From the NCBI GenBank assembly GCA_026770705.1, contig JANJGN010000385.1, positions 186,001-250,000 on the forward strand: DNA of 64,000 nucleotides. The letters are read 5' to 3'. This document shows, one piece after another, positions 26,636 to 62,576 of this stretch; positions within the stretch are counted from its first letter, which is position 1; every line of letters starts with the position of its first letter. A program made the translations under genes and the position numbers. This DNA comes from Isurus oxyrinchus (Eukaryota). Under the pieces are notes generated by a model. That model was not told where the DNA came from and made no database searches. It saw nothing but the letters and a program-made list of their open reading frames with translations.

Positions 26636-27470
26636 CATTTTTTTTCACAAATCATAATCTTTACAATTAAAGTCCCGACAAGATGATGGTGAATCATGAA
26701 CACATTGTCGGGGTGAATCTGTGCCCGGGAGCATAAAGCAGCAAAATCAGGAGCCCGCTTTACATCTCTCTGAATTTTAACTATCATTAACCCCAGTAAC
26801 ATCCATTCAAATGACTTAGTCATAAGATTCCTCACACATTCACTTGCACACTCACACACCCACACCCACACAGACACACTGACACACTCACTCATTCACA
26901 TTGACACACACTGACACAGTCACACACACCCACACAGACACACTGACACACTCACTCATTCACATTGACACACACTGACACAGTCACACACACACACACA
27001 CACACACGCTGACACAATCACACACATTCACATTGACACGCACTGACAGTCACACATACACACACACACGCTGACACAATCACACACATTCACATTGACA
27101 CACACATATTGACAGTCACACACACACACACACACACACGCTCATAAAGACAGACACAAACACAGTCACGTGAGGTGAATAGTGTCGATGTATTTAAGGG
27201 GAAGCTGGATAAACACATGAGGGAGAAATGAATAGAAGGATATGGTGATGGGGTGAGATGGAGAAGGGGTGGGCGGAGACTCGTGTGGAGCAGAAACTCC
27301 AGCATGGAACAGATGGGCCGAATGGCTCCTTTCCCTGCTGTAGAACGCAGGTAAAGTTTCAGTTGGAATTAATGAACAGGGCCTGTGTGAAATAGATTGC
27401 TAAGCAGTAGATAAGGAGGGGAGAGGCTGTGGCATGGTGCAGGATGACCTTGCGTGAATGAGGCCAGGGT

Positions 27471-27587
27471 CTAATATCTACAGCAGAGACCACAAGTCTC
27501 ATTTGGTTCTCTCCAATTACAGCAGTTACAGCAGAATATGCAGAGCTGCTGTCTGTCCATTCTCTTCTGGCGCTGCAGCAAGGAGCC
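27471..27587 (-). CDS. hamp: Hepcidin copy 1, exon 3 (furin site + mature peptide)
   Basis: cttttccag|, phase 0: GSLLQRQKR/MDRQQLCIFCCNCCNWREPNETCGLCCRY*. RxKR site and the 8-Cys pattern C-xx-CC-x-CC-(x8)-C-xx-CC. Confidence 0.93.
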   Translation of the reverse strand, partial: GSLLQRQKRMDRQQLCIFCCNCCNWREPNETCGLCCRY

Positions 27588-28559
27588 CTGGAAAAGCAGG
27601 AAGACAATAGGTGAGAACATTCCGGAAAGAAAGAAGGCATCATTTCAATCAGGCGCGTCATTGGAAGGAGGATGGCGCATTTCTATAGCGCCTTTCCCCT
27701 CCTCAGGATGGCCCAAAGTGTTCCACAGCTGAAGGAAGGACTTTTTCTGAAGTGAGCTCACCGCTGTAATGTAGGAAACGCAGCAGGCAATTCACGCACA
27801 GCAAGATCCCACAAACAGAAATGTGATAATGGCCCCGATTTTCAGTTTTTTACCAATGTCAGTTGAGGGATAAATGTTTGCCCCAGGAAAGCAGACATAA
27901 CTGCATCCCATCCACCCCCCACCACCCCCTCCACACATACCCCCAACTCCTGACGCACTTCATTTAAATTGTGGCCATGGAATCCTCTACATCCATCTGA
28001 GAGGGCAGATGTTGTCTCAGTTTAACATCTCATCTGAAAGACAGCGCATTCAACAGTGCAGCACCCCCTCAGTACTGACCCTCCGACTGTGCAGCACTCC
28101 CTCAGTACTGACCGTCTGACAATGCAGCACCCCCTCAGTACTGACCCTCCGACTGTGCAGTCCCCCGCCGGTACTGACCCTCTGATAATGCAGCACTCCA
28201 AGACTGACTGTCTGACAATGCAGCACCCCCTCAGTACTGACCCTCCGACTCTCCTGCCCCCCCGCTGGTACTGACCCTCCGACAGCTCGGTAATTTCTCA
28301 ATTATGCCTGGTGGTCCTTTTAACTCAGAGCTGAGAGTTGCAGAGAATCGAGCAGACATCCTGAACTGACACTTGCAGTGCAAGTACTGGGAGCGCGCTG
28401 GTCATTATCATGCTGCTGTCTGTGGGATCTTACTGTGCGCCAATGGCTGATTCTTTTCCCACAGTACATCAGTGACCTCACATGAAAGAAAAAAAGCACT
28501 TGATTGTCTGCGAAACAGTTTGGGACGTCCTGATGTGTTGGAAGGCGCTAGAGAAATGC

Positions 28560-28710
28560 AAGAGTTGACGTTTCGAGTCCTCATGACCCTTCTGAGGACT
28601 CGAAACGTCAACTCTTTTCTTCTCCGCCGATGCTGCCAGACCTGCTGAGTTTTTTCAGGTAATTCTGTTTTTGTTTTGGCTTTCCAGCATCTGCAGTTTT
28701 CTTTGTTTTT
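28560..28710. mobile_element. Penelope-like short repeat with inverted 5' piece (24-bp perfect hairpin)
   Basis: 28560-28583 is the exact reverse complement of 28593-28616. The family body gatgctgccagacctgctgag follows. Confidence 0.7.
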
Positions 28711-29983
28711 ATAGAGAAATGCAAGTCCTCTTTGTCTTTCACTCGATCCTCTAAGGTGTCTGTTGATTAACCAGCCTCTCGGTGTTTGATGTAGGCCTGG
28801 TTATAAACAGGTAGAAGGATCAAATATCAAAAATGCTTTGGCTGACAGTCAAACCGATTGTGCATTCGGAGAGATTAGATACGGTCTGCACACAATGACT
28901 CCAGTCTCTGGCACTGACTGCCGCCTGGGGTCTCCCTTCCACATAACACTCACAACTTGCAATTACACAGCGCCTCTGACATTGCAAAATGTCCCAGCCC
29001 ACATTACCGGAGCGTAAATCAGAGAGAAGTCTAACACTGAGTCACATATGGAGATATTAGGGATAGGTGACCAAAAGCTTGGTCAAAGATGTCAGTTTTT
29101 AAGGAGCGTCTTAAAGGAGAGAGAGAGAGAGAGGCAGAGAGGTTAAGGGAGGGTATTCCGGAGCTCAGGGCCCCAGGCAGCTGAAGGCACGGCCACCAAT
29201 GGTGGAGCGATGGGAATCAGGGGGACCCGGGAGATGCAGTAATGTCAGAGATTTTGGAGGAACATCGGGACCGGAGGAGGTGTTCTCCTGCTCCATATCT
29301 CTCTCTCTCTTCCTCTCTTCCACTCCTCCTCTCCCTGTCTCTCTCTCTCCTACTCTTCCGCTCAATTGCCCTCTCTCCCAATCTTTCTCTCCTCTCTCCC
29401 TTTTCCTGTCTCTCTCCCTCTCTCTCCCCTGTCTCCTTCTCCCACTCTGTATCTCTCCCTCTCTCTCACACTATTTTTGTAACTTTCGCTCACTCTGTAA
29501 CTCTCCCTTTCCTGTTAATTTCTCTCTCTTGGACAATCACTCTTCCCTTTTCACTTTCCCTCACTCTGCATCTCTTTAATTTCTCCCTCTGTCACTCTCT
29601 CCCACCTATTTTCTTTCCCTTTCACCCCTCCCCGTCCCACTCTCTGTCTCTCTCTTCCAATCCCTCCCTCCCCCATTCCATCCCTCTCTCCGACTCTCGA
29701 CTCCCAGCCTCTCTTTAACCCACTCCCAGGCTGGATCAGTCTCCCTCTCACTATTCCCGGCGTGGGTTACATTTAAAATTCCTGTGGGGATATGTTCACT
29801 TCCTTGGAATTGCCTCTTCCCAGCTTTGCAAAAAAAGTGGGGGCGGGGGGGGTTCGATTTCAAACATGCCTCCTGAGTATAACCGAGACAGACTGCCACT
29901 GAAATCAGCTTGAAATCAGAAAACTTTCTGTGGAAGAAACGAGCAGGGAGAAACCTTAAAATAAGGAATGAATTTCCACCTAC

Positions 29984-30040
29984 CGTGTCCGGGGAATCCA
30001 CAGATTTCTCAATCGTCGAAGAACCTAAAGCAGTGTCAAC
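29984..30040 (-). CDS. hamp: Hepcidin copy 1, exon 2 (propeptide VDTALGSSTIEKSVDSPDT)
   Basis: ttctttttgcag| ... ACG|gtaggt, 57 nt, open only in phase 0. Size and phase fit HAMP exon 2. Confidence 0.85.
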
Positions 30041-30804
30041 CTGCAAAAAGAAAGAATTTATCAGGGAGAAAGTGAGAGGAGGATTGAGGGAGAGGGAGAG
30101 AGAGAGAGAGAGGTACAGGAGAGAGAGGGGGAGGAGGACAGACTTGCATTTCTCTAACGCCTTTCACCACATCCCAAAGCATTTCACAGCCACTGAAGGA
30201 TGTTTTTGAAGTGCACTCACACTGTAGGAAATGTGGCAGCTGATTTGTGCACAGCAAGATCCCACAAATAGCAATGTGATCATGGCCTAGATCATCTGTT
30301 TTTGGTGATGTTGGGTGAGGGATAAATATTGGTCCCAGGACACCGGGGAGAACACCCCCTGCTCTTCCTCCAAATAGTGGCTGTGGGATCTTTCACACCC
30401 GCCCGAGAGGGCAGACGGGGGACTCAGTTTAATGTCTCATTCAACATTGTTGTGCTCCCTCAGTACTAACCCTTTGACACTGCAGCACTCCCTCAGTACT
30501 AACCCTTCGATAGTGCTGCACTCCCACAGTATTGTCCCTCCGTCAGTGCAGCGCTACCTCAGTACTGACCCTCCGACAGTGCAACACTTCCACAGTACTG
30601 ACCCTGTAACAATGCAGCACTTCCTCAGTACTGACCTCCGACAGTATAGCACTCACTCAGTACTGTCCCTCCAATAGTGCAACACTTCCACACTACTGAC
30701 CCTCTGACAGTCCAGCACTCCCTCAGCACGGAGTGTTGACCGATGTTATGGGACTGAATTCCCTGGAGTGAGACTCAGACCAGAGATTTAGGTAGGGTTG
30801 TTCC

Positions 30805-31645
30805 GGCTGGAGGAGGTTACAGAGATAGGGAGGGTTGTAGAGGCTGTAGGAGGTAACAGAGATAGGGAGGGTTCTAGAGGCTGTAGGAGGTGACAGAGAT
30901 AGGGAAGGTTGTAGGGGCTGTAGGAGGTTACAGAGATAGGGAGGTGAGTAGGGGCTGTAGGAGGTTAAAGAGATGGGGGGGTTGTGGGGGCTGGAGGAGG
31001 TTACAGAGGTAGGGAGGGTTGTAGAGGCTGGAGGAGGTTACCAAAATAGATACTGTTGTAGGGGCCACAGTAGGTTACAGAGATAGGGAGAGTTATAGTG
31101 TGGAGAGGACGTTATAGAGTTCATGAGCATTGTAGGGGCTGGAGGAGGTTACAGTGATTCTGAGGGTCGTGGGGCCTGGAGGAGGTTACAGAGATAGGAA
31201 GGGTTGTAGGGCCTGGAGGAGGTTACAGAGATAGGGAGGGTTGTAGGGTCTGGAGCAGGTTACAGAGATAGGGAGGGTTGTAGGGTCTAGAGGAGGTTAC
31301 AGTGATCATGAGGGTTGTGGGGCCTGGGGGAGGTTACAGAGATAGGTAGGGTTGTAGGGGCTGGAGGAGGTTACAGAGATAGGGAGGTTTATAGGGGCTG
31401 GAGGAGGTTACAGAGATAGGGAGGGTTGTAGGGGCTGGAGGAGGTTACGGAGATAGGGACAGTTGTAGGGGCTGGAGGAAGTTACAGAGATAGGGATTGG
31501 TGTAGGGGCTGGAGGAGGTTACAGATATAGGGAGGGTTGTAGCGGCTGGAGGAGGTTACAGAGATAGGGAGGGGTGTAGGGGCTGGAGGAGGTTACAGAG
31601 ATAGGGAGGGTTGTAAGGCCTGGTGGAGGTTACAGAGATAGGGAG
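30805..31645. repeat. 37-bp VNTR (ggaggaggttacagagatagggagggttgtaggggct) in hepcidin intron 1, ~23 copies
   Basis: Period 37 (for example 31141, 31178). Confidence 0.93.
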
Positions 31646-31846
31646 TGGCTGAGGAGGGATTGAAAACAAGAATGAGAATTTCAGGGGAAACGACAGAAGG
31701 AAATGATGTTAAATTCATAGAGGGCGACAATATTAAAGGCACGAACATAATAATATCAAACTGCGGAAGTGACCAGTCTATCTGGGTGGTAGACGTAGAC
31801 TCATGTGCAAGAAACACCTCACCCAGAGGGACATCTCTTAGCTTAC

Positions 31847-31924
31847 CCTCGACAAGGAGAAGAAGTGACTCAGCTGCAGGGAGAGCAGCAAAGTCAGAGT
31901 GAACAAGACAAGTCGCCATTTCAT
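31847..31924 (-). CDS. hamp: Hepcidin copy 1, exon 1 (signal peptide MKWRLVLFTLTLLLSLQLSHFFSLSR)
   Basis: ATG ~85 nt below the TATA box, basic n-region and hydrophobic h-region, AGG|gtaagc in phase 0. Confidence 0.88.
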
Positions 31925-32008
31925 CTGGGAGCTTCCCATCTCTGCCTGTCTCTTCTGATCTTCTGGCTCTGCTTTGATGCTTTGGTTTGTAACTAGAGGA
32001 GCTTCCTG

Positions 32009-32225
32009 CTCTTATACCTGAAACACTTGAAGGGGACAGCCGCGGGTGGGTAGCTGTGTGGTATCACACCCATTTCTGGATATTGCAGTGTCGATGTTCC
32101 CTGTCCCACTGGCCTGGGACCAGCAGTAAGGTCACTGGGACATTGACTGTCTGGCGCCGAGAACTATCAGTCCCTCCGCAACGCCCTTCACCTTGTGCAA
32201 ATATGTGTTCATATTGACGCAACAC
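32009..32225 (-). promoter_or_regulatory. Hepcidin copy 1 proximal promoter
   Basis: TATAAGAG at 32009-32016. GGCGCC at 32153-32158 abutting AGAC/GTCT. C/EBP-like TTGCACAA and TTGCGTCAA upstream. Confidence 0.75.
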
Positions 32226-32599
32226 AACATAGCAAAAACAGAGGGGCTGGTTCTTATGTCGGCAAATCAGGTGAACCGCATGCCCCCTAACCCATTACTC
32301 CTCTCATTGCTACACTTACTATTTTACAAATTGTGTGCGTTGCTTTTATTTTGGACAAGGGGCCTTGAGGGGGAACTGATTTACGCTGAGGTTTAAGGGT
32401 TAACAGCCATGTCATGTGTTGATCGGTCAGTGTTTACCATGTGGAGACTGTCTGTCACCAGCTTTGTTCATGGTTTATCCAGGAACATTGAAGGGCATGA
32501 ACGTTCTTGCTTTGTATGGAACAAGTTACCAACTGGGTTCAGTCATCGACTCAGACTCACATCAACATAAACTGGCTTCTGACAGGTAAGTTTCTATTA

Positions 32600-33215
32600 C
32601 ATGAGGGTAGGAGGAGGCCATTTGGCCCCTCGAGCCTGCTCCACCATTCAATGAGATCATGGCTGATCTGCAAACTAGCCCCATATGGCTTTGTCCCATC
32701 TCCTTTAATACCTTTGGATAACAAAAATCTATCAGTCTCACAGGTTTAAAATGAACAACTTGATCGTGCATCAGTTCCTGTTTGGGGAAGACCGTTCCAA
32801 ATTTCTCCCACACTTTGTGCTTCCTAATTTAATTCCTTTTTAGGCTCTGACCCCGAGTCCCAGACTCCCCCCAACCAGGGGAAATGGTTTCTCTTTATCG
32901 CCCCTGATCTGTTCCCCTTAATATCATGCGAGCTTTCATCAAATCTCCTGCTTAACATTCTAACTTCCAGGGAATACAAGCCGAGTTTGTGTTTAATCTC
33001 TCCTTGTGATTTAACCCTTGGTGTCCTGGTCTCATTCTGGTAAATCGACACTGCTCTCCCTCCGAGGTCAATATATCCTTCCTAAGGTGTGGAGCCCAGA
33101 ATGTCTCACAGTGACTCCAGGTGTGGTCTAGCCAGGGCTTTATGTAGACTGAAGCATGACCTCTGCCCCCTTATATTCTAATCCGTGAGATAGAAAGGGC
33201 AGAGTTCCAGAATTG
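32600..33215 (-). mobile_element. CR1-type LINE 3' fragment (mirrored at ~59780-60395)
   Basis: KLGLYSLEVRMLSRR and GLEYKGAEVMLQ remnants. Confidence 0.75.
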
Positions 33216-35019
33216 TTGTGTTTATTCGACAACAGAATAACAGAGGAAGGTTTCCTCTCTGCCCTCTTCAGCCCCACTGGGAAGGTCAGGATGAGAAGGT
33301 TGGGCTGGGTCCCCTGTACTGGACACTCGCTGAATCTTCCAATGATAGTTCTGGGCTGGATTTCAAAACGCATAGACAAGGATTCAGTGTTCCATCACAT
33401 TCTGCCTTTGTCTCTTTTCCTCTCGTTCTCTTTCTCTACCATCCTGTCTCTCTATCTATCTATCTTTCTCCTCATTCTCTCCTGCTTCATCTCTATCACT
33501 TTCTTTCTACTTCTTTGTGTGTCTCTGTCTGTCTCTCTCTCTCTCACTCTTTCTTTCCTTGTCCTTATCTCTTTCAGTGTCTCCCTCTTTCTCTCTCTCT
33601 CTCTCTCTCTAAATGTGACCCTCTCTAACAGTTTGGCCCAGTACTCTTATTTCCCTGTTTTACTGGTGTTCCATTTGAAGGTGTACAAGACCAGATCAGA
33701 CCAGAATGTTTATTTTCCAGTGTTTACTTTGTTTTTTTCATTCTGGGTGTCTCTCGACTCTGTCTGTCCCTCTCTGTCCTTTTATTTCATTCTTTCATGT
33801 GATGTGGACATCACTGCCTAGGCCAGCATTTATTGCCCAACCCTAATTGCCCTTGTTCAGAGGCCACTTTTTAAAAGTCAACCACATTGCTGTGGGTCTG
33901 GAGTCACATGTAGGCCAGACCAGGTAAGGACAGCAGATTTCCCTCCCTAAAGGTCATTTGTGACCCAAATACAAGAATCAGCAATGGTTTCCTGGTCATC
34001 ATCGGACTTTTAATTCCAGGTTTTTATTGAATTGAAATTCCACCAACTGCTGTGGTGAGATTCTAACCAGGGTCCCAGGACCATTACACTGGGTCTCTGG
34101 ATTACTGGTCCAGTGAAAATACCATCAGGCCAACACCTCCCCACTCTTCCCTTCCTCCATCTTTCACACTTGTTCTCTCTCTCTCTCACTCTCCTTCTCT
34201 CTTCTCCCTCTCTCAGTCTCTGTCTGTCTCTCAATCTCTCTATCGCTCTCTATCTTCTGGAGGCTCTCTCTCTGACTGTCTCCCTACCTATATCTGTAAC
34301 CTCCTCTCTCTCTCCCTTTCCTCCAGCCCCTACAACCCTCCCTAAGGCAGCCTCCACCTGCCTCTACAATCCTCCCCATCTCTGTAACCACCTTCAACCC
34401 CTACACCCCTCCCTATATCTGTAACCACCTCCAACCCCCACAATCCTCCCCATCTCTGTAACCACCTTCAACCCCTACACCCCTCCCTATACCTGTAACC
34501 TCCTCCAGCCCCTGTAACCCTCCCTATCTCTTGAAGGGTTCTCAAAATTCCCACATTTTCCATATCATCAACAAGGATATTACTTTTGCACCTTTAAACT
34601 GCTGAGTTAAGTGGAAAACCCTGCAGACAGGAGGCTGGGCCCATGAAGGCCTGGGGCTGCACATGTCCGGGCTTATTGAGAGCAGTGTGGAATGTTTGGC
34701 CTGAAACCAGACAACGAGAGGAGACAGAATACGCATTCTTCCCTTTAATACAATCAACCCAGAGAAAGACTTCACTTCACACGCAACTGAAGCCCATCTA
34801 AATCTTGCATCAATAATCGCTCCTAACTTCTGAGGCCGGCAATTTAATTATGCGAACCCATCAATACTCCACACATACAATGGCTTTCAGTTCAAAACTA
34901 GTTACTGGGCAGGAAGACAATGATAAACATCATGCGAGCCCATTAACAACAACGAGACATCAATCACCTGGGGAAGCCCACCAAAGACAAACAAAGAACG
35001 AACCTTGATTTGATTAGAA

Positions 35020-36500
35020 CTCTCTCTATCACACTCTTCTGCTCTATCTCTCTCTCTCACACACACACACATTCTCTCTCTAACACTCACAATCTCTCTC
35101 TATCACACTCTTCTGCTCTATCTCTCTCTCTCACACACACACATTCTCTCTCTAACACTCACAATCTTTCTCTATCACACTCTTCTGCTCTCTCTCTCTC
35201 TCTCTCTCACACACACATTCTCTCTCTAACACTCACAATCTCTCTCTATCACACTCTTCTGCTCTATCTCTCTCTCTCTCTCACACACACATTCTCTCTC
35301 TAACACTCACAATCTCTCTCTATCACACTCTTCTGCTCTATCTCTCTCTCACACACACACACATTCTCTCTCTAACACTCACAATCTCTCTCTATCACAC
35401 TCTTCTGCTCTATCTCTCTCTCACACACACAGACATTCTCTCTCTAACACTCACAATCTCTCTCTATCGCACTCTTCTGCTCTATCTCTCTCTCTCACAC
35501 ACACACATTCTCTCTCTAACACTCACAATCTCTCTCTATCGCACTCTTCTGCTCTATCTCTTTCTCTCACACACACACATTCTCTCTCTAACACTCACAA
35601 TCTCTCTCTATCACACTCCTCTGCTCTATCTCTCTCTCACACACACACACATTCTCTCTCTAACACTCACAATCTCTCTCTATCACACTCCTCTACTCTA
35701 TCTCTCTCTCTCTCTCACACACACATTCTCTCTCTAACACTCACAATCTCTCTCTATCGCACTCTTCTGCTCTATCTCTCTCTCTCACACACACACATTC
35801 TCTCTCTAACACTCACAATCTCTCTCTATCACACTCTTCTGCTCTCTCTCTCTCTCTCTCACACACATTCTCTCTCTAACACTGACAATCTCTCTCTATC
35901 GCACTCTTCTGCTCTCTCTCTCTCTCACACACACACATTCTCTCTCAAACACTCACAATCTCTCTCTATCACACTCTTCTGCTCTATCTCTCTCTCTCTC
36001 ACACACACATTCTCTCTCTGACACTGACAATCTCTCTCTATCGCACTCTTCTGCTCTCTCTCTCTCTCTCACATACACATTCTCTCTGTCTCCCTCCCTC
36101 AAATACATTCTCTCTCTCTCTCAGACACAAACACTCTCTCACACACTCGCACACTTTCCCTAAAACTAACACAATCTCTCTTTCTGTCAAGCACACACTC
36201 TCTCTCACACACACACACTCTCTCTCTCAGACACACACATTCTCTCTCTCTCAAACATTTAACATTTCTCTTCATCTCGATCTTCTGCTGTCTCTCTCTT
36301 TCTCTCCCTCGCACACACACACACACTCTCTGTCACAAACACACGCTCTCTCCCACACACTCTCTCTCACACACTCTCACATGCACACTCTCTCCCTCAT
36401 ATACAAACACTCGCCCTCACACATGCACACTCTCTATCTCTTTTTCTCTCTCACACAGTCTCTCTGTCTCTCTCTCTCTCTCAGACACTCTCTCTCTCTC
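35020..36500. repeat. Compound (CT)/(CA) ~63-bp tandem repeat (mirrored at ~53060-54150)
   Basis: Unit tctctctctaacactcacaatctctctctatcacactcttctgctcta(tc)n(ac)n. Confidence 0.9.
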
Positions 36501-37813
36501 TGATACAGAATGTTTTAAGACCTGCTCATGATTTCAGCTCAAAACCCAGGTAGATTCTCCCCAGTGAGGGAGTGGTGAGGGAGTGCTGCACTGTCAGAGG
36601 ATCAGTACTGAGGGCGTGCTGCACTGTCAGAGGGTATGTACTGAGGGAGTGCTGCACTGTCGGAGGATCAGTACTGAACACAATGTCCATTCAGAACAGC
36701 TCGGTCCCCGATCAGAGAAACAGCCTCAGACAGAACCAACTGACGCTGGAATCCATACAATTCATCAACGTGTTGGGAGTTAGTTTGATGTCGGAGATGG
36801 AGTGTTACTGGGAAGGAGGGAACCCGTCAGGATGAACAGCTCGATGTATGACAAGGAAAGGATGAGCTAAGAGGGGTTGGCCACGGACAGACGGAGCATG
36901 TGAAGACTCAACAAGCTAATGGCAGGTGAAGAGCTGGAAAGGTGTCTTTTCAACACAAGGTTTAGACACAGAACTCGATGTTTGATCGGGTATTTCAAAC
37001 CAGAGAAACTCTTTACAGGGTGAATGGACCTTGTCAATAATCCATCCAGCCAACCTCGCCTGGAGATTAGTCCAATATTAGACACTAAACCGAGTCCCCC
37101 GTCTGCCCTCTCGGGCGGGTGTGAAAGATCCCACAGCCACTATTTGGAGGAAGAGCAGGGGGGAGATCTCCCCGGTGTCCTGGCACCAATATTTATCCCT
37201 CAACCAACATCACCAAAAACAGGTGATCACATTGCTGTTTGTGGGAGCTTGCTGTGCGCTAATTGGCTGCTGCGTTTCCTACATTACAACAGTAACCACA
37301 CTTCGAAAAAAGGGTTCACTCAACTGTAAAGTGTTCTGGGACATCCAGAGACCATGCTGTACAGAAGAGATTTGACAGGAGCAGCAAGTGTTTTACTTAC
37401 AGGAGAATGAGTCCCCAGGGTTGTAGAGTCAATCCTGTCAGATGAATGTCTAACTGGAGACACTTCAGGGAGCTGATCTAATTCTGGAAATGTTCAGTTT
37501 AGCAGGATCGGAGGAGAGATGATCTTCCTCTCCTGACTGCATCGGACACGAGGTGAACTGGCTCTGGGAGGAGGGTCAGTGTTAACCCAGTTTTTCTGTG
37601 TTTGAGGGAGATGTGAAACTGGGGATGTCACGTGGTTTTTTGGTGTGGTAACTCCATGTCTTTATTTGGTGCAGCACTCATTTAGTTCATGTCGTTGTTT
37701 CAATGCTACAAAACCACAACGCATTCTGGACTATTTCTGCCTGACCTGCTGTCAGATACACAGTCTGACAGGGAGGCGGAAAAGTGGTCCCTAGCAACGT
37801 GTGTAACTGTGAA

Positions 37814-40800
37814 NNNNNNNNNNNNNNNNNNNNNNNNNNNNNNNNNNNNNNNNNNNNNNNNNNNNNNNNNNNNNNNNNNNNNNNNNNNNNNNNNNNNNNN
37901 NNNNNNNNNNNNNNNNNNNNNNNNNNNNNNNNNNNNNNNNNNNNNNNNNNNNNNNNNNNNNNNNNNNNNNNNNNNNNNNNNNNNNNNNNNNNNNNNNNNN
38001 NCACTCTTTTGCACAAACACTCTTTCACGCACACACATGCACACACACACGCACACAAACGCACAAACTCACTCACACACAAACCCTCACACACACACAG
38101 ACACAAACATTAGCACACACACACACACACTCACACATGCACACATACTCTCAAACACACACTGTTTTGCACAAACACTTTCTCTTTCACACACACACAT
38201 ACACACACACTCTCTCTCTCACACACATGTTCTCTCTCACTCCCTGTCTCAAACACACAATCTCCCCCTCCCTCAAACACTCACACCATCTCTTTCTCGC
38301 ACACTCCCTCTCTCAAACACACACACCCTCTTTCTCAAACACACACACACACACGATCTCACACACACACTCTCACATACACAAACACTCTCTCACAGAC
38401 ACACACTCTGTTTTGCACACACACTATCTCACACGCACATTCTCTCTATCTTTCTCTCTCACACATAAATTCTTTCTCACTCTCACAGACGTTCTCTTTC
38501 TCTCACACACACTCTCTCTCTCACACACAAGCTACCTCCCTCTCTCATGCACACACACTCTACCTCTCTTTTGCTCTCTCACACATACACACTCTCAGTC
38601 TCTCACACATACATTGTCTCTCTCTCTCACATAAACGCACTCTCTCTCTCTGAGATGGAAGGTTGGGATTTTGAGACCGTCTCAAGGTTTCAGCTTAAAA
38701 TGCGGACGGACTCTTCCCAGTGAGGGAGTGCTGCACTGTCAGAGGGTCAGTACTGAGAGAGTGCTGCACTGTTGGAGGGTTAGCACTGAGGGAGTGCTGC
38801 ACTTCCAGAGGGTCGGTACTGAGGGAGAGCTGCACTCCCAGAGGGTCAGTGCTGAGGGAGTGCTGCACTCCCAGAGGGTCAATACTGAAGGAGTGCTGCA
38901 CTCTCAAAGGGTCAATGCTGAGGGAGTGCTGCACTGTCAGAGGGTGGGCACTGAGGGAATGCTGCTCTGTCAGACCTGCCATATTTCAGATGACATTTGA
39001 AATTAGCAACATGCCTCATGTATAATTATATATCATCAGCTCAAAATAAATAGATTATTCCTGTACGTTTCACTTTACTGTAAATTGTTTGCAGTTTCAT
39101 TTCCTTAGAAACCAGGCTTGTGTGATCACTATTTTTAAATAACGTTAATAATAAAGATGCAACAATCCACACGCACACATGTACACACACACACACATTC
39201 ACTCACAAGGGTACATAGACAGACACACACTCACNNNNNNNNNNNNNNNNNNNNNNNNNNNNNNNNNNNNNNNNNNNNNNNNNNNNNNNNNNNNNNNNNN
39301 NNNNNNNNNNNNNNNNNNNNNNNNNNNNNNNNNNNNNNNNNNNNNNNNNNNNNNNNNNNNNNNNNNNNNNNNNNNNNTTAGAGTCCAATAAAAATTTAAA
39401 AGAATATATGATTAATACAATTGCTTGTCTTTGAGGTGTAGATTGTTGACGTTTGCAGCTGTTCAAGGTTAATTGGTTTCCTGTGGCATCCTGGTGGTGA
39501 TTTGATTCAGATTTGCACTTTGTTGAAGATGCGCTGTTAGCTTCAGAAAGAGAGAGAGAGAGAGAGAGAATTTCTGCTCTTTTCCAGCAGTGTTTTTGAG
39601 TGACTGCCATCTTTCTTTTTCCTCCTACTTTCTCTTATATCTGCTTGACAGAACCTGTTGTTAAACTCCTGTCTGTATATTCCCAAAGGGAATTCGATCA
39701 GCATGTCTTGCAATCATTGTCGTAGACCAAGTAATCCCTTTTTTGATCTTTGCATCTCTGAAACATTTGATGCATTTCAAGATATAAATCAACAGGAGAT
39801 GGAGGCATTTCATCCTCCACAAGAGGTTTTGAATGACTGATGAATATCTGCATGGTGAGCAGTTCCCATTAGCTTGATAGACCTACAGTGATCAGAGTCC
39901 AGCGCTTTGCATTTTTAATGGAGCCCCTGTTTCAGGTGGACCCTGACACACCTCAGTGAGAACTTTCATGCAACATGTCTGTAGTGCAATTCATTTGAAG
40001 CTTTCCAGAGAAGTGATCAAGTTTGCAGTATCAGCAATCAGGTGACTCGTGACAGCCATTTTTGATCAATGCCTAATCTTGTACTTTTGAAAAACAGGTC
40101 TCCTTTAAACAGTTCAATACATTTTTGGCTCGTTGGTTAAGTTGAAGGAAGCTCTGTTATGACATAACAGATGGTAAATGCTGAGCTGTTCAAATCCTGG
40201 AGGGAAACTTGAAACAACTGTCACAACTAATTTCCAACTTGTATGTTTTGAGATGTGGGCTTTGAATTCAGTAGTAATGAGATTAAGATGTTTAAGAGGT
40301 AATTATGGTTGGTTGAAAAAAAGGGTTTAAAATATATTTTCCCCCAAATGCAATTTCCAAAGCAAGTCTCTTTGATTGTTAAGAATGAACCAATTAAACC
40401 ACGTTTGGTGGAGTCAAAGAAAGAGTAAGTTTATTAGTTACCTAACTGGAGGAAAAATAATNNNNNNNNNNNNNNNNNNNNNNNNNNNNNNNNNNNNNNN
40501 NNNNNNNNNNNNNNNNNNNNNNNNNNNNNNNNNNNNNNNNNNNNNNNNNNNNNNNNNNNNNNNNNNNNNNNNNNNNNNNNNNNNNNNNNNNNNNNNNNNN
40601 NNNNNNNNNNNNNNNNNNNNNNNNNNNNNNNNNNNNNNNNNNNNNNNNNNNNNNNNNNNNNNNNNNNNNNNNNNNNNNNNNNNNNNNNNNNNNNNNNNNN
40701 NNNNNNNNNNNNNNNNNNNNNNNNNNNNNNNNNNNNNNNNNNNNNNNNNNNNNNNNNNNNNNNNNNNATAATTATAGAGTCCAATAAAAAATTAAAAGAG

Positions 40801-41965
40801 TCGTTTGCTTGTACTACAGCGTAGGCTGTGAAGTTTGAAGCTGTTTTAAATTAGTTGGTTTTCTGTAGATTCCTGTATTTTATCTGGCTCAGACTTGCAC
40901 ATTGTTGAAGACATTCTGTTAGCTTCAGACAGAGAGAGAGAGAGAGGGAGAAATCATTTCTGCTCTTTTCCAGCAGTGTTTGTGGAAGACTGCCATATTT
41001 CTTTTTCCCCTCCTTTCTCTGAAATCTGCTTGGCAGAACCATTTGTTAAACTCCTGTCTGTATATCCCTGAAGTCAATTCGATCAGCTTGTTTTTCATTC
41101 ATTGTTATAGACCAAGTATTCCCATTTTTTTATCTTTGCATCTCTGAAACCTTTGATGCATTTCAAGATATAAATCAACAGGAGACGGGGGTATTGTATC
41201 CTCCACAGGGGGTTTTGAATGGTTGATGATTATCCGCTTGGTGAGCAGTTCCCAATGTTTTGATTGAACTACAGCTGATCAAAGTCCAGCACTTTACATT
41301 TTAATGCCTTCCTTTTAAGAGTGTCTCTATTTGAAGTGGACCCTGACACACCCCAGGCGTGAACTTCCATGCAACAGGTCTGCAGTGCAATTCATTTGAA
41401 CCTTTCCAGAGAAGTGATCAACTTCACAGTATCAGCAATCAGGTGACTTGTGTCAGCCATTTTTGATCTGTGTACAATCTTGTATTTCTTTGAAAAACAG
41501 GTCGCTTTTAGACAGTTCAATATGTCTTTGGTCTGTTAGTTAAGTTGTAGGAAGCTCTTAATCGCAGTTTGTTGTCATTGGGATATTGTCTTTGTGTGTG
41601 TGTTTGTGTGTGTGAGTGAGTGTGTGAGTGAATGTGTGTGTGTGAGTGAATGTGTGTGTGTGTGTGAATGTGTGTGTTTGTGTCTGTCTGNNNNNNNNNN
41701 NNNNNNNNNNNNNNNNNNNNNNNNNNNNNNNNNNNNNNNNNNNNNNNNNNNNNNNNNNNNNNNNNNNNNNNNNNNNNNNNNNNNNNNNNNNNNNNNNNNN
41801 NNNNNNNNNNNNNNNNNNNNNNNNNNNNNNNNNNNNNNNNNNNNNNNNNNNNNNNNNNNNNNNNNNNNNNNNNNNNNNNNNNNNNNNNNNNNNNNNNNNN
41901 NNNNNNNNNNNNNNNNNNNNNNNNNNNNNNNNNNNNNNNNNNNNNNNNNNNNNNNNNNNNNNNNN
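37814..41965. other. Four assembly gaps: 37814-38001, 39235-39377, 40462-40767, 41691-41965
   Basis: Runs of N. Confidence 0.99.
39378..41570. repeat. Two diverged direct copies of a ~0.8-1 kb non-coding element (39378-40200 and 40768-41570), possibly LTR-derived
   Basis: Colinear blocks, for example tttcaagatataaatcaacaggaga near 39775 and at 41161, with many substitutions. Confidence 0.75.
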
Positions 41966-48324: not shown

Positions 48325-49134
48325 CTGTAAAAACAGCCATTAATTACTGCACTACAGGTTTACAATGATGCTCCGATGTATCTCGAGAAGCGATACACTC
48401 ACTCAGTGTTTAAATACTCATTCTCGGGCAATGCTGACATTTATTGTCCATCCCTAGTTTCCCCTTGAGAAGGTGGTGGGGGGTCTTCCTCCTGAACCAC
48501 TGGTTTGTCCCAAACTGGGAGACCAGTTCAGAGGGCAGGTAAGAGTTAACCATGTTGGTGTCTGAGACTGGAGTCACATCCACATCGAGACATGCTTCCC
48601 TCCCTCAAGGGTATGTAGTCTCTACACATGTAACAACCAACCTCACTGAAATAATCGACTATCAGGTCATTATCACACGGTGGTTTGCGGGATCTTGCTG
48701 TGCACAAATCAGTACCTGTGTTTCCTACATTTCAACAGTGAGCTCACTTCGATAATGCTTCACTGGCTGTTGAATGTTTAGTAATTTCTAAGCAATTTAT
48801 GAATACAGGTATTGCATTTCAACATGTAACATTTATATATAATATTTATCAATTAAAGAATGAGAAGTTCAGCAATTAAAAGGGTTGTTCAGGACAGTTA
48901 GAGAGAGAAAGGTCGTCAAGTACGGAGATTGGAAACGAAGACCTGACAGCCTTGTCCTCACAACCGTTGAAGGAGAAACTGAGAGCAAAAACAGAAAGGG
49001 AGAGGAAAAATTGGATGTGTGGATAACGTGGACTGAGCGAGGATTGAAGAAAACTGGATTAAAAACAACACGATCCCAATGGCTCCACGGAGACCACGGA
49101 GACAACAAACAAACAAATGTATCTCCACACTCAC

Positions 49135-49416
49135 ATTCCACAGTGATGGTTATGAACCCCTCCACTGCTCCATGTTCATTCTCTGCCACACACTGATAGT
49201 CTCCAGTGTCCCTGGATGTAACGTGAGGAATCACCAACCACAGCTCATTGTTGGAACTTGTTCTGTTCATTGGGACATTAAGATGTCGCCACGTCAGGTT
49301 AGAAGCTGGGAAGCTCTTGACAGAGCAGATTATCACTGCAGAATTCCACTCAATTATATTGATTGATGAAGCGTAAATCATATTAAGCGAAGTAAATGAG
49401 AGATCCTGTGGTGCAT
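49135..49416 (-). CDS. Siglec-like gene D, membrane-proximal C2-set Ig exon (no upstream exons found in window)
   Basis: ttttag| ... T|gtgagt, 282 nt, ~93% identical to 10204-10485. Confidence 0.85.
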
Positions 49417-52400: not shown

Positions 52401-53654
52401 CTTATTGCAGATCAGGCTGTTCAACCAATGCTGCTGTTCACTGAGGTGACTCCGATTCTACATTCACACATTAATGATCTCATGTCCAGCAGCAAACATC
52501 TGAATGAAGCCAGGTTCAAGAAAAATCCCAGCTGCTTGATCCGACAGTTATCTGTTCAGGCATGGCCCCTTGTTCCAAATAACAAACATTATTTAAAAAT
52601 AGTCATCACATGAGCCTGGTTAACAAGGAAATGAAACCATGAACAATTTGCAGTGAAGTGAAACGTACAGGACTAATCTATTTAGATTGAGCTGATGATA
52701 TAGAATGTTACACGAGGCATGTTGCTAATTTCAAACATCATCTGAATTACGACAGTTCTGACAGTGCAGCACTCCCTCAGTACTGACCCTCTGACAGTGC
52801 AGCACTCCCTCACTACTGACCCTCTGACAGTGCAGCACTCCCTCAGTACTGACCCTCTGACAGTGCAGCACTCCCTCACTACTGACCCTCTGACAGCGCA
52901 GCACTACCTCAGTACTGACCCTCTGACAGTGCAGCACTCCCTCAGTACTGACCCTCTGACAGTGCAGCACACCCTCAGTACTCCCTCACTGGGGAGAATC
53001 TGCCTGGGTTTTGAGCAGAAATCATGTGCACGTCTTAAAACCACATCCTTCCGTATTAGAGAGAGTGTGTCTGAGAGAGAGAGAGGGCGAGAGAGACAGA
53101 GAGAGTCTGTGAGAGAGAAAAAGAGTTAGAAACAGTGTGTACATGTGTGAGGGAGAGTGTGTGTGTGTGTGAGGGAGCGATTGTGCGTATCAGAGAGAGT
53201 GTATGTGTGTGTGAGGGAGGATGTGTGTGTGAGGGAGAGTGTGTGTGTGTGAGAGAGATTCTGTGTGTGTGAGGGAGAGATTGTGCGTATCAGAGAGAGT
53301 GTGTGTGTGTGTGAGGGAGGATGTGTGTGTGAGGGAGGATGTGTGTGTGAGGGAGAGTGTGTGTGTGTGAGAGAGATTCTGTGTGTGTGAGGGAGAGTGT
53401 GTGTGTGTGTGAGAGATTCTGTGTGTGTGAGGGAGAGAGTGCATGAGAGTGAGAAAGAGGGAGACAGCAGAAGAGAAAGATAGAGAGAGATGGTAAATGT
53501 TTGAGAGAGAGAGAATGAGAGTGTCTGAGAGAGAGAGAGAATGTATGTGTGTGAGAGAGAGAGAATGTGTGTGTGTGAGAGAGAGAATGTGTGTGTGTGA
53601 GAGAGATAGAGCAGAAGAGTGTGATAGAGAGAGATTGTGAGTGTTAGAGAGAGA

Positions 53655-53685
<31 letters not shown>

Positions 53686-54083
53686 CAGAAGAGTGTGATA
53701 GAGAGAGATTGTGAGTGTTAGAGAGAGAATGTGTGTGTGAGAGAGAGAGAGATAGAGCAGAAGAGTGTGATAGAGAGAGATTGTGAGTGCTGACAGAGAG
53801 AATGTGTGTGTGTGAGAGAGAGAGAGAGCAGAAGAGTGTGATAGAGAGAGATTGTGAGTGTTAGAGAGAGAATGTGTGTGTGAGAGAGAGAGAGATAGAG
53901 CAGAAGAGTGTGATAGAGAGAGATTGTGAGTGTTAGAGAGAGAATGTGTGTGTGTGTGAGAGAGAGATAGAGCAGAAGAGTGTGATAGAGAGAGATTGTG
54001 AGTGTTAGAGAGAGAATGTGTGTGTGAGAGAGAGAGAGAGCAGAAGAGTGCGATAGAGAGACATTGTGAGTGTTAGAGAGAGA

Positions 54084-54118
<35 letters not shown>

Positions 54119-55970: not shown

Positions 55971-56003
<33 letters not shown>

Positions 56004-60991: not shown

Positions 60992-61075
60992 CAGGAAGCT
61001 CCTCTAGTTACAAACCAAAGCATCAAAGCAGAGCCAGAAGATCAGAAGAGACAGGCAGAGATGGGAAGCTCCCAG

Positions 61076-61153
61076 ATGAAATGGCGACTTGTCTTGTTCA
61101 CTCTGACTTTGCTGCTCTCCCTGCAGCTGAGTCACTTCTTCTCCTTGTCGAGG
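61076..61153 (+). CDS. hamp: Hepcidin copy 2, exon 1 (signal peptide)
   Basis: Coding sequence identical to 31847-31924, donor AGG|gtaagc. Confidence 0.85.
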
Positions 61154-61349
61154 GTAAGCTAAGAGATGTCCCTCTGGGTGAGGTGTTTCTTGCACATGAC
61201 TCTACGTCTACCACCCAGATAGACTGGTCTCTTCCGCAGTTTGATATTATTATGTTCGTGCCTTTAATATTGTCGCCCTCTATGAATTTAACATCATTTC
61301 CTTCTGTCGTTTCCCCTGAAATTCTCATTCTTGTTTTCAATCCCTCCTC

Positions 61350-61815
61350 AGCCACTCCCTATCTCTGTAACCTCCACCAGGCCTTACAAACCTCCCTATC
61401 TCTGTAACCTCCTCCAGCCACTACAACTGTCCCTATCTCTGTTACCTCCTCCAGCCCCTACAACACTCCCTATCTCCGTAACCTCCTCCAGCCCCTACAA
61501 CCCTCCCTATCTCTGTAACCTCCTCCAGCCCCTATAAACCTCCCTATCTCTGTAACCTCCTCCAGCCCCTACAACCCTACCTATCTCTGTAACCTCCCCC
61601 AGGCCCCACAACCCTCATGATCACTGTAACCTCCTCTAGACCCTACAACCCTCCCTATCTCTGTAACCTGCTCCAGACCCTACAACTCTCCCTATCTCTG
61701 TAACCTCCTCCAGACCCTACAACCCTCCCTATCTCTGTAACCTCCTCCAGGCCCCACGACCCTCAGAATCACTGTAACCTCCTCCAGCCCCTACAATGCT
61801 CATGAACTCTATAAC
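61350..61815. repeat. 37-bp VNTR in hepcidin copy 2 intron 1, ~12 copies
   Basis: Shorter mirror of 30805-31645. Confidence 0.9.
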
Positions 61816-62519
61816 ATCGGTCAACACTCCGTGCTGAGGGAGTGCTGCACTGTCAGAGGGTCAGTAGTGTGGAAGTGTTGCACTATTGGAGGAACAGTAC
61901 TGAGTGAGTGCTATACTGTCGGAGGTCAGTACTGAGGAAGTGCTGCATTTTTACAGGGTCAGTACTGTGGAAGTGTTGCACTGTCGGAGGGTCAGTACTG
62001 AGGGAGCGCTGCACTGACGGAGGGATAATACTGTGGGAGTGCAGCACTATCGAGGGGTTAGTACCGAGGGAGTGCTGCAGTGTCAAAGGGTTAGTACTGA
62101 GGGAGCACAACAATGTTGAATGAGACATTAAACTGAGTCCCCCGTCTGCCCTCTCGGGCGGGTGTGAAAGATCCCACAGCCACTATTTGGAGGAAGAGCA
62201 GGGGGTGTTCTCCCCGGTGTCCTGGGACCAATATTTATCCCTCACCCAACATCACCAAAAACAGGTGATCTAGGCCATGATCACATTGCTATTTGTGGGA
62301 TCTTGCTGTGCACAAATCAGCTGCCACATTTCCTACAGTGTGAGTGCACTTCAAAAACATCCTTCAGTGGCTGTGAAATGCTTTGGGATGTGGTGAAAGG
62401 CGTTAGAGAAATGCAAGTCTGTCCTCCTCCCCCTCTCTCTCCTGTACCTCTCTCTCTCTCTCTCCCTCTCCCTCAATCCTCCTCTCACTTTCTCCCTGAT
62501 AAATTCTTTCTTTTTGCAG

Positions 62520-62576
62520 GTTGACACTGCTTTAGGTTCTTCGATGATTGAGAAATCTGTGGATTCCCCGGACACG
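62520..62576 (+). CDS. hamp: Hepcidin copy 2, exon 2 (VDTALGSSMIEKSVDSPDT); exon 3 expected just past the window end
   Basis: One substitution versus copy 1 (ACG>ATG, T>M). Splice sites intact. Confidence 0.82.

What the first reader, a model, noticed from the sequence alone, without database searches (positions are those of the whole stretch)
27471..31924. Hidden three-exon hepcidin gene with an atypical mature peptide
Seen: three phase-0 exons (78, 57 and 117 nt) with canonical splice sites join into an 83-aa prepropeptide, MKWRLVLFTLTLLLSLQLSHFFSLSR-VDTALGSSTIEKSVDSPDT-GSLLQRQKR/MDRQQLCIFCCNCCNWREPNETCGLCCRY. The ORF track does not show this protein. Established: signal/pro/mature organisation, three exons, a furin site and 8 Cys define hepcidin. 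Ferroportin-regulating hepcidins start DTHFP or QSHL and have a ~4-residue hairpin loop. Unusual here: there is no N-terminal His motif, the loop is 8 residues (NWREPNET) and carries an N-glycosylation sequon (NET), and net charge is ~0 (3 Arg vs 1 Asp + 2 Glu). Inference: a divergent, possibly glycosylated hepcidin that fits neither the iron-hormone type nor the cationic antimicrobial type. I cannot confirm from here whether it has been described.
Basis: partly seen in the sequence, partly recalled or inferred. Interest (0 to 1): 0.92.

Follow-up and report, generated by a model that had tools for sequence, protein, structure and literature searches.

The report
Atypical shark hepcidin gene copy
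This is a real, correctly spliced and transcribed shark gene for a hepcidin-type peptide; it has lost the histidine-containing start and the positive charge of every other known shark or ray hepcidin, so it is probably a diversified side copy and not the iron hormone.

Summary
The three minus-strand exons exist as described. Exon 3 passes Pfam's Hepcidin threshold. Contigs of a public run join the exons at exactly the predicted junctions. Three corrections apply.

1. A conserved, better-placed ATG 15 nt upstream (31939) makes the precursor 88 aa, not 83.
2. The 8-residue loop is normal for the lineage: 6 of 9 NCBI-annotated shark and ray hepcidins have it. Mobula has a sequon at the same place.
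3. This is not the animal's only hepcidin. The same run holds a contig reading ...QKR-M-SHLSICMYCC, the canonical type.

What is unusual is the N-terminus MDRQQL and the net charge of 0. The nine relatives all have a histidine there and charges of +1 to +6. Against basking-shark hepcidin, the signal and pro parts are 52/59 identical but the mature peptide only 12/29. Canonical genes of two shark orders show the reverse pattern (38/59 and 26/29).

No protein with this mature peptide turned up in two very large protein collections or in the papers searched. The scan has already reported this gene type many times on other DNA of this genome. It is a multi-copy family among Siglec genes, and this window holds a second, partial copy in a palindrome. 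Function is untested.

The parts
32149..32158 (-). BMP-responsive-element-like GGCGCCAGAC, about 160 nt upstream of the likely transcript start
   Evidence: 2 matches in the window, one at each hepcidin promoter copy, against 0.02 expected. GGCGCC occurs only 3 times in 64 kb. Its function is inferred from the human HAMP promoter and was not tested.
32011..32016 (-). TATAAG box
   Evidence: read from the sequence. In one search, X1 depth rises sharply downstream of about 31990.
31847..31990 (-). Exon 1: 5'UTR (start approximate) plus coding 31939-31847 (31 codons, MGSSQMKWRLVLFTLTLLLSLQLSHFFSLSR), followed by a GT donor
   Evidence: 29/31 identical to Cetorhinus hepcidin P0004. Junction contigs.
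30041..31846 (-). Intron 1, holding a 37-nt minisatellite (about 30721-31722)
   Evidence: joint 30040|31847, GT..AG. family D2.
29984..30040 (-). Exon 2, 19 codons of propeptide (VDTALGSSTIEKSVDSPDT)
   Evidence: 16/19 identical to P0004.
27588..29983 (-). Intron 2. It contains an optional 154-nt exon (28642-28795) inside a repeat, with in-frame stops
   Evidence: main joint 27587|29984, and minor joints 27586->28641 and 28795->29983. One search shows the stops.
27180..27587 (-). Exon 3: coding 27587-27471 (end of the propeptide GSLLQRQKR, the 29-aa mature peptide, TAG), then about 290 nt of 3'UTR (end approximate)
   Evidence: Pfam Hepcidin, 32.1 bits; exon-level depth down to about 27200.
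27474..27560 (-). Mature peptide MDRQQLCIFCCNCCNWREPNETCGLCCRY: 8 Cys, 8-residue loop, NET sequon
   Evidence: the AF2 model is a hairpin, strands 15-20 and 32-37 of the exon-3 peptide, at low confidence.
61061..62576 (+). Second, partial hepcidin copy in the other palindrome arm: exon 1 at 61061-61153 (identical), exon 2 at 62520-62576 (one Thr>Met change). Its exon 3 would lie beyond the window end
   Evidence: 98.6% identity to the first copy over 3,666 aligned bases.

Best explanation
This is one intact copy of an amplified, lineage-specific paralogue of the shark hepcidin (HAMP) gene. It lies in the Siglec/CD22-linked hepcidin cluster.

The gene is transcribed from a TATA promoter and spliced from three phase-0 exons into an 88-aa secretory precursor. 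The precursor is presumably cut after RQKR by a furin-type convertase. That releases a 29-residue, four-disulfide beta-hairpin peptide.

The peptide keeps the hepcidin cysteine frame, the CIFCC core and the long loop typical of elasmobranchs. It has replaced the conserved N-terminal M-S-H-L-S segment and lost all net positive charge. In hormone-type hepcidins that end is buried in ferroportin.

A canonical MSHLSIC-type hepcidin is present in the same sequencing run. The most likely reading is therefore a diversified, secreted side-branch peptide, functionally analogous to teleost Hamp2 (defence- or inflammation-linked, or another non-hormonal role), and not the ferroportin-regulating iron hormone.

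Shown here: gene structure, splicing, family membership, divergence pattern, copy multiplicity. Inferred: convertase cleavage, disulfide fold, loss of ferroportin activity, biological role.
For: - Family: Pfam Hepcidin at 32.1 bits against a cut-off of 27.
- Splicing: exact GT..AG junction contigs in run X1. Exon bins have word depth 1.5e5-7.8e5, against about 700-3,000 in unique intron bins.
- Sequence of the transcript: no base differences are listed within exon-3 coding for X1 (table 3), so the RNA encodes this peptide.
- Outlier among relatives: all nine annotated elasmobranch hepcidins carry His in an M-[ST]-H-type N-terminus and charge +1 to +6. This one has His 0 and charge 0.
- Divergence pattern: against Cetorhinus, prepro is 52/59 identical but mature only 12/29 (Fisher p = 8e-6). 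Canonical Cetorhinus against Scyliorhinus is 38/59 and 26/29. All 8 Cys, the furin-site arginines and the G after Cys6 are kept.
- Canonical type in the same run: at the X1 loose end at 27558, the match stops right after the ATG of the mature peptide. The next 30 letters read SHLSICMYCC in frame (table 7; hand translation).
- Tolerance of the loop: the hepcidin loop is extracellular and variable, while the N- and C-termini are buried in ferroportin (PMC8235187).
- Precedent: sea bass Hamp1 (QSHLSL...) regulates ferroportin and Hamp2 does not (PMC5665920).
- Context: a Siglec-type V-set/Ig_CD22 exon lies nearby. Copies are multiple.
Against: - No functional test of any kind was possible.
- Net charge 0 argues against a classical cationic membrane-active antimicrobial peptide.
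- The CIF core after the first Cys is identical to human hepcidin. The promoter keeps a BMP-element-like GGCGCCAGAC. An iron-linked role therefore remains possible.
- Transcripts cannot be assigned to this copy. The two copies in the window differ by only 1.4%. One junction contig of higher depth carries a one-base variant that neither copy in the window has.
- The tissue of run X1 is unknown. The run is labelled RNA only as a guess. The tool warns that contig depth is a poor measure of expression.
- Contigs at intron-like depth also cover 250 nt of promoter (record 8).
Confidence: 0.6

Rival explanations
1. The peptide still acts on ferroportin, as the animal's dominant iron hormone with a re-tooled N-terminus, or as a weak agonist or competitive antagonist of the canonical hepcidin.
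For: - C7-I8-F9 and the CC-x-CC core are identical to human hepcidin.
- There are six residues before the first Cys, as in human and teleost hormones.
- The long loop would be extracellular and tolerated (PMC8235187).
- A BMP-element-like motif and a TATA box lie in the promoter.
- Word depth on the exons is very high.
Against: - His3 and the hydrophobic position 4 are replaced by Arg and Gln. These are conserved from teleost QSHLSL through elasmobranch MSHLSI to human DTHFPI.
- A canonical-type transcript exists in the same run (table 7).
- By general knowledge, N-terminally truncated human hepcidin-20 is inactive on ferroportin.
Confidence: 0.2
2. It is a functionless by-product of segmental duplication: a young duplicate that is transcribed because it inherited a strong promoter, while its peptide is drifting without selected function.
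For: - It lies in a 98.6%-identical palindrome in a repeat-rich, rearranging Siglec cluster.
- Earlier notes of this scan report sibling copies with broken splice sites or frames, and chimeric hepcidin-Siglec transcripts (unverified here).
- The neutral charge fits neither known activity.
Against: - The reading frame, all four splice sites, the furin site and all 8 Cys are intact.
- Change is concentrated in the non-Cys mature positions (4/21 retained), while the prepro part is 88% retained. Uniform decay would not give that pattern.
- The same peptide is reported from several copies.
Confidence: 0.12
3. It is an ancient second elasmobranch hepcidin lineage, not a recent lamniform-level derivative. 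Its 5' half was homogenised with the canonical gene by gene conversion.
For: - CCNCC and CGLCCR are shared with rays (Mobula, Hypanus) and teleosts, whereas the shark canonical genes have CCGCC and CG[YF]CCK.
- Its closest mature peptide is Mobula, at 16/29.
- The 30 nt before the mature ATG are identical between the two types in run X1. The next 13 nt then match at only 3 positions (hand comparison).
Against: - No such type appears among the nine annotated elasmobranch proteins, or in 5.8 billion clustered proteins.
- The peptide is too short for a reliable tree.
- This rival concerns origin, not function, and is compatible with the best explanation.
Confidence: 0.25

Closest known systems
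Canonical elasmobranch hepcidins as annotated by NCBI (Cetorhinus maximus LOC144671611 isoform X2; Scyliorhinus canicula hepcidin-2-like; Mustelus asterias, Heptranchias perlo, Mobula hypostoma and Hypanus sabinus hepcidin-1)
   Same: - 88-aa precursor starting MGSSQMK.
- The same exon boundaries. The Cetorhinus isoforms diverge exactly after residue 50, which is the end of exon 2.
- An LLR-x-[KR]-R furin site.
- A 29-aa mature peptide starting with Met, with the same 8-Cys frame and an 8-residue loop ending in Thr-Cys-Gly.
   Different: The N-terminus is MDRQQL in place of M-S-H-L-S-[IV]. There is no His. The loop is acidic to neutral (NWREPNET) in place of Lys/Arg-rich. Net charge is 0 against +4 to +6. 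Only 11-16 of 29 mature residues are shared.
Teleost Hamp2-type hepcidins (e.g. sea bass Hamp2, PMC5665920)
   Same: A multi-copy, lineage-specific duplicate. The prepro region is conserved and the mature peptide is divergent. The QSHL-type N-terminus is lost. A hormone-type copy coexists with it.
   Different: The origin is very probably independent, because its prepro region is closest to the shark canonical gene. Teleost Hamp2 peptides are described as antimicrobial and are usually cationic, whereas this one is neutral. No activity data exist for it.
Human hepcidin-25 (HAMP; PDB 1M4F, 2KEF, 3H0T, 6WBV)
   Same: Three-exon gene next to Siglec genes (MAG and CD22 in human; general knowledge). 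Furin-processed precursor. 8 Cys. Identical C-I-F-C-C core. Predicted beta-hairpin.
   Different: The loop has 8 residues against 4. It has no DTHFP or ATCUN (X-X-His) N-terminus. Charge is neutral. It is multi-copy.

Membership tests
Hepcidin family (Pfam PF06446) | Sequence match to the family model above the curated threshold | tested here: met
   the exon-3 peptide scores 32.1 bits against a cut-off of 27, E 1.4e-7, profile positions 24-52 of 53.
Hepcidin family (Pfam PF06446) | Eight cysteines in the frame C-x2-CC-x-CC-xn-C-x2-CC | tested here: met
   regex over six frames; all 8 Cys columns invariant across 10 sequences.
Hepcidin family (Pfam PF06446) | Three-exon gene with the mature peptide in exon 3, spliced as predicted | tested here: met
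   (canonical GT/AG sites). (junction contigs 27587|29984 and 30040|31847).
Hepcidin family (Pfam PF06446) | Signal peptide, propeptide and an R-x-[KR]-R convertase site directly before the mature peptide | tested here: met
   RQKR lies before Met1 of the mature peptide, and R56 and R59 are invariant. The signal peptide was judged by eye and by 94% identity to the annotated Cetorhinus precursor. No signal-peptide predictor was available.
Hepcidin family (Pfam PF06446) | Disulfide-stapled beta-hairpin fold | tested here: inconclusive
   AF2 gives two strands (15-20, 32-37), but mean pLDDT is only 62.5; the only three Foldseek matches among 350,542 chains are hepcidins (1S6W, 3H0T, 4QAE), at non-significant E values of 2.5-4.7.
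Hepcidin family (Pfam PF06446) | Linkage to Siglec (MAG/CD22-type) genes, as for HAMP in mammals | tested here: met
   a V-set plus Ig_CD22 exon at 3413-3883 and an Ig exon at 48869-49426. The mammalian arrangement is from general knowledge.
Iron-hormone hepcidin (HAMP/Hamp1 type, ferroportin ligand) | Conserved N-terminal segment with His at position 3 and a hydrophobic residue at position 4 (DTHFPI, QSHLSL, MSHLSI) | tested here: not met
   MDRQQL, no His. All nine annotated elasmobranch relatives have it.
Iron-hormone hepcidin (HAMP/Hamp1 type, ferroportin ligand) | Binds ferroportin and triggers its occlusion or internalisation | not testable with these tools
Iron-hormone hepcidin (HAMP/Hamp1 type, ferroportin ligand) | BMP/SMAD-responsive promoter | tested here: inconclusive
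   GGCGCCAGAC lies about 160 nt upstream of the TATA-defined start. It is rare in the window, but its responsiveness is untested.
Antimicrobial-type hepcidin (teleost Hamp2-like) | Net cationic mature peptide | tested here: not met
   charge 0 (3 Arg against 1 Asp and 2 Glu).
Antimicrobial-type hepcidin (teleost Hamp2-like) | Lineage-specific multi-copy duplicate, with a conserved prepro region and a fast-changing mature peptide, beside a hormone-type copy | tested here: met
   (52/59 against 12/29). (second copy in the window). One search, table 7 (canonical-type contig in the same run). (many copies noted elsewhere in this genome; unverified notes).
Antimicrobial-type hepcidin (teleost Hamp2-like) | Antimicrobial activity | not testable with these tools
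   This needs MIC assays with folded peptide.

The most novel reading that the evidence does not exclude
Cartilaginous fishes run two hepcidin-ferroportin pairings. The canonical MSHLS-type peptide acts on the ferroportin that has the C326-equivalent thiol. This neutral, His-less, abundantly transcribed type acts on the second ferroportin paralogue that lacks that cysteine, or antagonises the first one. The second paralogue is noted for some cartilaginous fish in PMC8235187. That would be a second, previously unseen arm of vertebrate iron control.
Probability: 0.06. Interest if true: 0.8.

Novelty: new variant of a known kind. Interest (0 to 1): 0.45.

Why it matters
Hepcidin is the master iron hormone of vertebrates, and cartilaginous fishes are the earliest lineage known to have it. 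In the library searched, shark hepcidins appear only as automatic annotations; no paper there describes them.

This locus shows that a shark has, beside a canonical peptide, an amplified and transcribed copy. In that copy, exactly the ferroportin-facing N-terminus and the charged loop have been rewritten, while the scaffold is kept.

That parallels the teleost Hamp1/Hamp2 split, but seems to have arisen independently and ended in a neutral peptide. It offers a natural experiment on which parts of hepcidin are needed for ferroportin control. It also offers a candidate new activity for the hepcidin scaffold.

The correction that the 8-residue loop is the normal elasmobranch state is useful for anyone who models the hepcidin-ferroportin interaction in early vertebrates.

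Tried and rejected
- **Joined model not used.** Every search used single exons by reference. Length-filtered searches therefore could not use the window's own full precursor. I went through annotated relatives (P0002, P0004) and a profile with the exons as separate rows (A1).
- **Representative search.** Exon 3 against 1.84 billion representatives gave only 2 hits. P0001 is a spurious repeat protein. P0002 is Heptranchias hepcidin-1.
- **No relative's DNA.** No DNA of the Cetorhinus gene could be fetched, so no dN/dS or gene-conversion test was possible.
- **PDB sequence search.** Only human hepcidin came up, at E 0.86.
- **Foldseek.** Nothing significant.
- **Runs X5, X7 and X8, organism B.** They matched essentially only the repeats in the introns. 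One low-depth X5 junction contig (depth 24) and one 92%-identical exon-2/intron-2 contig are the only hints from a second organism. There is therefore no solid independent expression evidence.
- **Literature.** No paper in the held library describes shark hepcidin peptides or holds the motifs NWREPNET, MDRQQLC, MSHLSIC or MSHLSVC.
- **Rejected: the 8-residue loop is atypical.** It is lineage-normal.
- **Rejected: this is the animal's only hepcidin.** A canonical-type contig is in the same run.
- **Rejected: pseudogene.** Frame, splice sites, Cys and furin site are all intact.
- **Not attempted.** A ferroportin complex prediction, because no admissible ferroportin sequence was available. Any look at the N runs at 37814-41965, which were left untouched.
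Full report
**1. What is in the sequence**

- Exon 1 ends at 31847, followed by GTAAGC.
- Exon 2 is 30040-29984. A pyrimidine tract and AG precede it, and GTAGGT follows it.
- Exon 3 starts at 27587 after TTTTCCAG and ends with TAG at 27471.

One correction concerns the start codon.
- An in-frame ATG lies 15 nt upstream, at 31939.
- It has G at -3 and G at +4.
- The resulting start, MGSSQMK, is the start of the annotated shark hepcidin precursors.
- The precursor is therefore most likely 88 aa (31 + 19 + 38 codons), with all introns in phase 0.

Every search was made exon by exon, by reference, and the joined step was left out.

**2. More than chance, and which family**

The 38-residue exon-3 peptide alone scores 32.1 bits against Pfam Hepcidin (PF06446, cut-off 27, E 1.4e-7). 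A six-frame scan finds the hepcidin Cys motif only once in the 64-kb window.

The only PDB sequence match is human hepcidin. It is weak (E 0.86), but the C-I-F-C-C core is identical.

An AlphaFold model built on ten sequences is of low confidence (pLDDT 62.5). It gives a two-stranded hairpin with the long loop between the strands. The only three Foldseek rows among 350,542 chains are hepcidin structures, none of them significant.

**3. Transcription and splicing**

I laid four runs on 26900-32300.

Run X1 is from organism A. It is labelled RNA only as a guess. Its contigs skip 27588-29983 (9 contigs, plus 1 with a one-base variant) and 30041-31846 (11 contigs, plus 1 variant). The skipped ends are GT..AG on the gene strand.

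Word depth in the exon bins is 1.5e5 to 7.8e5. In unique intron bins it is roughly 700-3,000. No difference from the window is listed within the exon-3 coding part, so this RNA encodes this peptide.

Several caveats apply.
- The tool warns that contig depth is a poor measure of expression.
- The tissue is unknown.
- Contigs at intron-like depth also cover 250 nt of promoter (record 8).
- Transcripts cannot be assigned to this copy. One junction contig of higher depth differs by one base at 29985. By my reading this changes the last codon of exon 2 from Thr to Met, and neither copy in this window has it.
- A minor 3'UTR variant (27274) also shows that more than one copy or allele is transcribed.

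Minor joints define an optional 154-nt exon (28642-28795) inside a repeat. It carries in-frame stops.

Runs X5, X7 and X8 (organism B) matched almost only repeats.

**4. A second hepcidin type in the same run**

Table 7 lists one X1 contig whose match to the window stops at 27558. That is exactly the last base of the ATG codon that begins the mature peptide.

I took the reverse complement of the 30 loose letters shown and translated it by hand. In frame it reads S-H-L-S-I-C-M-Y-C-C. The same run therefore holds ...QKR-M-SHLSICMYCC, the canonical elasmobranch type.

The 30 nt before the break are identical between the two types. Of the next 13 nt only 3 agree, and then 15 of 17 agree across the Cys core. 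The difference is sharply localised to the four N-terminal codons. The loop of that contig was not shown.

**5. Comparison with known shark and ray hepcidins**

Searches through annotated relatives gave nine NCBI-annotated elasmobranch hepcidins.

| Species | Id | Mature peptide | Loop length |
|---|---|---|---|
| Cetorhinus | P0004 | MSHLSVCVYCCGCCNKKGTKKTCGYCCKL | 8 |
| Scyliorhinus | P0005 | | 8 |
| Scyliorhinus | P0006 | | 4 |
| Mustelus | P0009 | | 8 |
| Heptranchias | P0003 | starts WTHVPI... | 8 |
| Stegostoma | P0010 | | 4 |
| Heterodontus | P0011 | | 4 |
| Mobula | P0012 | | 8 |
| Hypanus | P0013 | | 8 |

- Six of the nine have an 8-residue loop. The long loop is therefore the usual elasmobranch state, not a peculiarity of this gene.
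- Mobula has an N-R-T sequon at the same position as NET here.
- All nine have a histidine in an M-[ST]-H-type N-terminus and net charge +1 to +6. The window peptide has no His and charge 0. This is what is unusual about it.

**6. Pattern of divergence**

| Comparison | Signal + pro | Mature peptide |
|---|---|---|
| Window gene vs Cetorhinus P0004 | 52/59 identical | 12/29 identical (4/21 outside the cysteines) |
| Cetorhinus vs Scyliorhinus, canonical genes | 38/59 identical | 26/29 identical |

The first contrast gives Fisher p = 8e-6. The canonical genes of two shark orders show the reverse pattern.

The gene thus shares very recent prepro ancestry with a lamniform canonical hepcidin. By inference, the host is a lamniform or a close relative. 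It is not Cetorhinus itself, because the canonical contig in X1 differs from P0004. Its mature peptide, by contrast, lies outside the whole shark-ray range.

Two origins fit these data.
- A recent duplication followed by a burst of change.
- An old paralogue whose 5' half was homogenised by gene conversion. CCNCC and CGLCCR are shared with rays.

I could not separate them, because no DNA of relatives could be fetched.

**7. Context**

The gene sits in one arm of a large palindrome. The arms run from about 28760-39206 and 50127-63808.

The other arm carries a second copy on the + strand.
- Its promoter differs at 1 of 330 aligned bases, and its exon 1 with the 5'UTR is identical.
- Exon 2 has one Thr>Met change.
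- Its intron-1 minisatellite is 440 nt shorter.
- Identity is 98.6% over 3,666 aligned bases.
- Its exon 3 would lie beyond the window end.

A Siglec-type V-set/Ig_CD22 exon (3413-3883) and a C2-type Ig exon (48869-49426) lie nearby. This matches the HAMP-MAG-CD22 neighbourhood of mammals (general knowledge).

The promoter has TATAAG at 32016-32011. It also has GGCGCCAGAC at 32158-32149, a BMP-element-like motif. That 10-mer occurs only at the two hepcidin promoters in the window, against 0.02 expected by chance.

**8. Earlier notes of this scan**

The scan has already reported this atypical hepcidin many times on other pieces of the same genome. They include intact copies, copies with a broken donor or frame, and hepcidin-Siglec chimeras.

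Those notes are unverified AI notes, and I used them only as leads. My own data agree on four points: the splicing, the copy multiplicity, the Siglec linkage and the existence of two types.

**9. Mechanism**

Most likely (about 0.6), the peptide is secreted and cut after RQKR to give a 29-residue, four-disulfide hairpin that no longer works as the ferroportin hormone.
- In the hepcidin-ferroportin structure the N- and C-termini are buried in ferroportin, while the variable loop is extracellular (PMC8235187).
- In sea bass only the QSHLSL-type Hamp1 regulates ferroportin; Hamp2 does not (PMC5665920).
- In this peptide the N-terminal motif is replaced. With it goes the X-X-His copper/nickel (ATCUN) site (general knowledge).
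- A canonical copy coexists with it.

The peptide works like a Hamp2-type side branch, but it fails the cationic criterion. It is very probably not orthologous to teleost Hamp2.

The rivals are residual ferroportin agonism or antagonism (0.2) and functionless drift (0.12).

A minimal second convertase site (R-M-D-R before Gln) could give a 26-residue form. The extreme C-terminal position of the NET sequon in a very short precursor makes glycosylation uncertain. Both points are inference.

**10. Novelty**

No protein with this mature peptide was found among 1.84 billion representatives or in 5.8 billion clustered proteins searched with a profile that carried this exon's own words. Both searches have limited reach for so short a peptide. 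The papers searched also hold nothing of it.

I class it as a new variant of a known kind, of moderate interest.

Noticed in passing
window 27558 (run X1, table 7): One contig of the same run matches the window up to the ATG that starts the mature peptide. It then reads SHLSICMYCC in frame (hand translation). This is a canonical MSHLS-type hepcidin mRNA that shares an identical pro-region end with the atypical type.
   Followed up: partly
window 28760-39206 and 50127-63808: A large palindrome with arms of roughly 10 kb, 92-99% identical. The centre holds four N runs (37814-41965), which were left untouched. Each arm carries a hepcidin promoter and exons 1-2.
   Followed up: partly
window 61061-62576 (+): A second hepcidin copy. 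Exon 1 is identical. Exon 2 has one Thr>Met change (SSMIEK). The sequence runs into a roughly 33-nt satellite at 63831-64000, and exon 3 is not within the window. It could be a full copy or one of the truncated or chimeric copies that earlier notes mention.
   Followed up: partly
window 28642-28795 (-): An optional 154-nt exon inside a dispersed repeat in intron 2. A minority of X1 contigs use it (joints 27586->28641 and 28795->29983). It has in-frame stops, so it would truncate the precursor after the propeptide.
   Followed up: partly
window 29985 (run X1, tables 5 and 5c): One exon 2-exon 3 junction contig of higher depth carries a one-base variant. By my reading it turns the last codon of exon 2 from Thr to Met. 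Neither copy in this window has it, so another copy or allele is also transcribed.
   Followed up: no
window 30721-31722 and 61352-61818: A 37-nt minisatellite in intron 1, about 440 nt shorter in the second copy. It accounts for the strong GC skew of 30001-32000.
   Followed up: no
window 34901-36000: A dense tandem array with mixed 20-30-nt spacing and GC skew -0.64. It is mirrored at about 53350-53790 in the other palindrome arm.
   Followed up: no
window 3413-3883 (+) and 48869-49426 (-): Siglec-type exons. One is a V-set domain that also matches the CD22-like first Ig domain. The other is a C2/I-set Ig domain. They place the hepcidin copies inside a Siglec receptor cluster.
   Followed up: partly
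P0007 and P0008 (Cetorhinus maximus LOC144671611 isoforms X3 and X1): NCBI models in the basking shark splice hepcidin exons 1-2 (first 50 residues identical to the hepcidin isoform) onto unrelated downstream exons. This parallels the chimeric hepcidin transcripts that earlier notes report for this genome.
   Followed up: no
window 32149-32158 and 60842-60851: GGCGCCAGAC, a BMP-responsive-element-like motif, occurs only at the two hepcidin promoters in the window (0.02 expected by chance). It is the subject of another note, s1-871353.
   Followed up: partly
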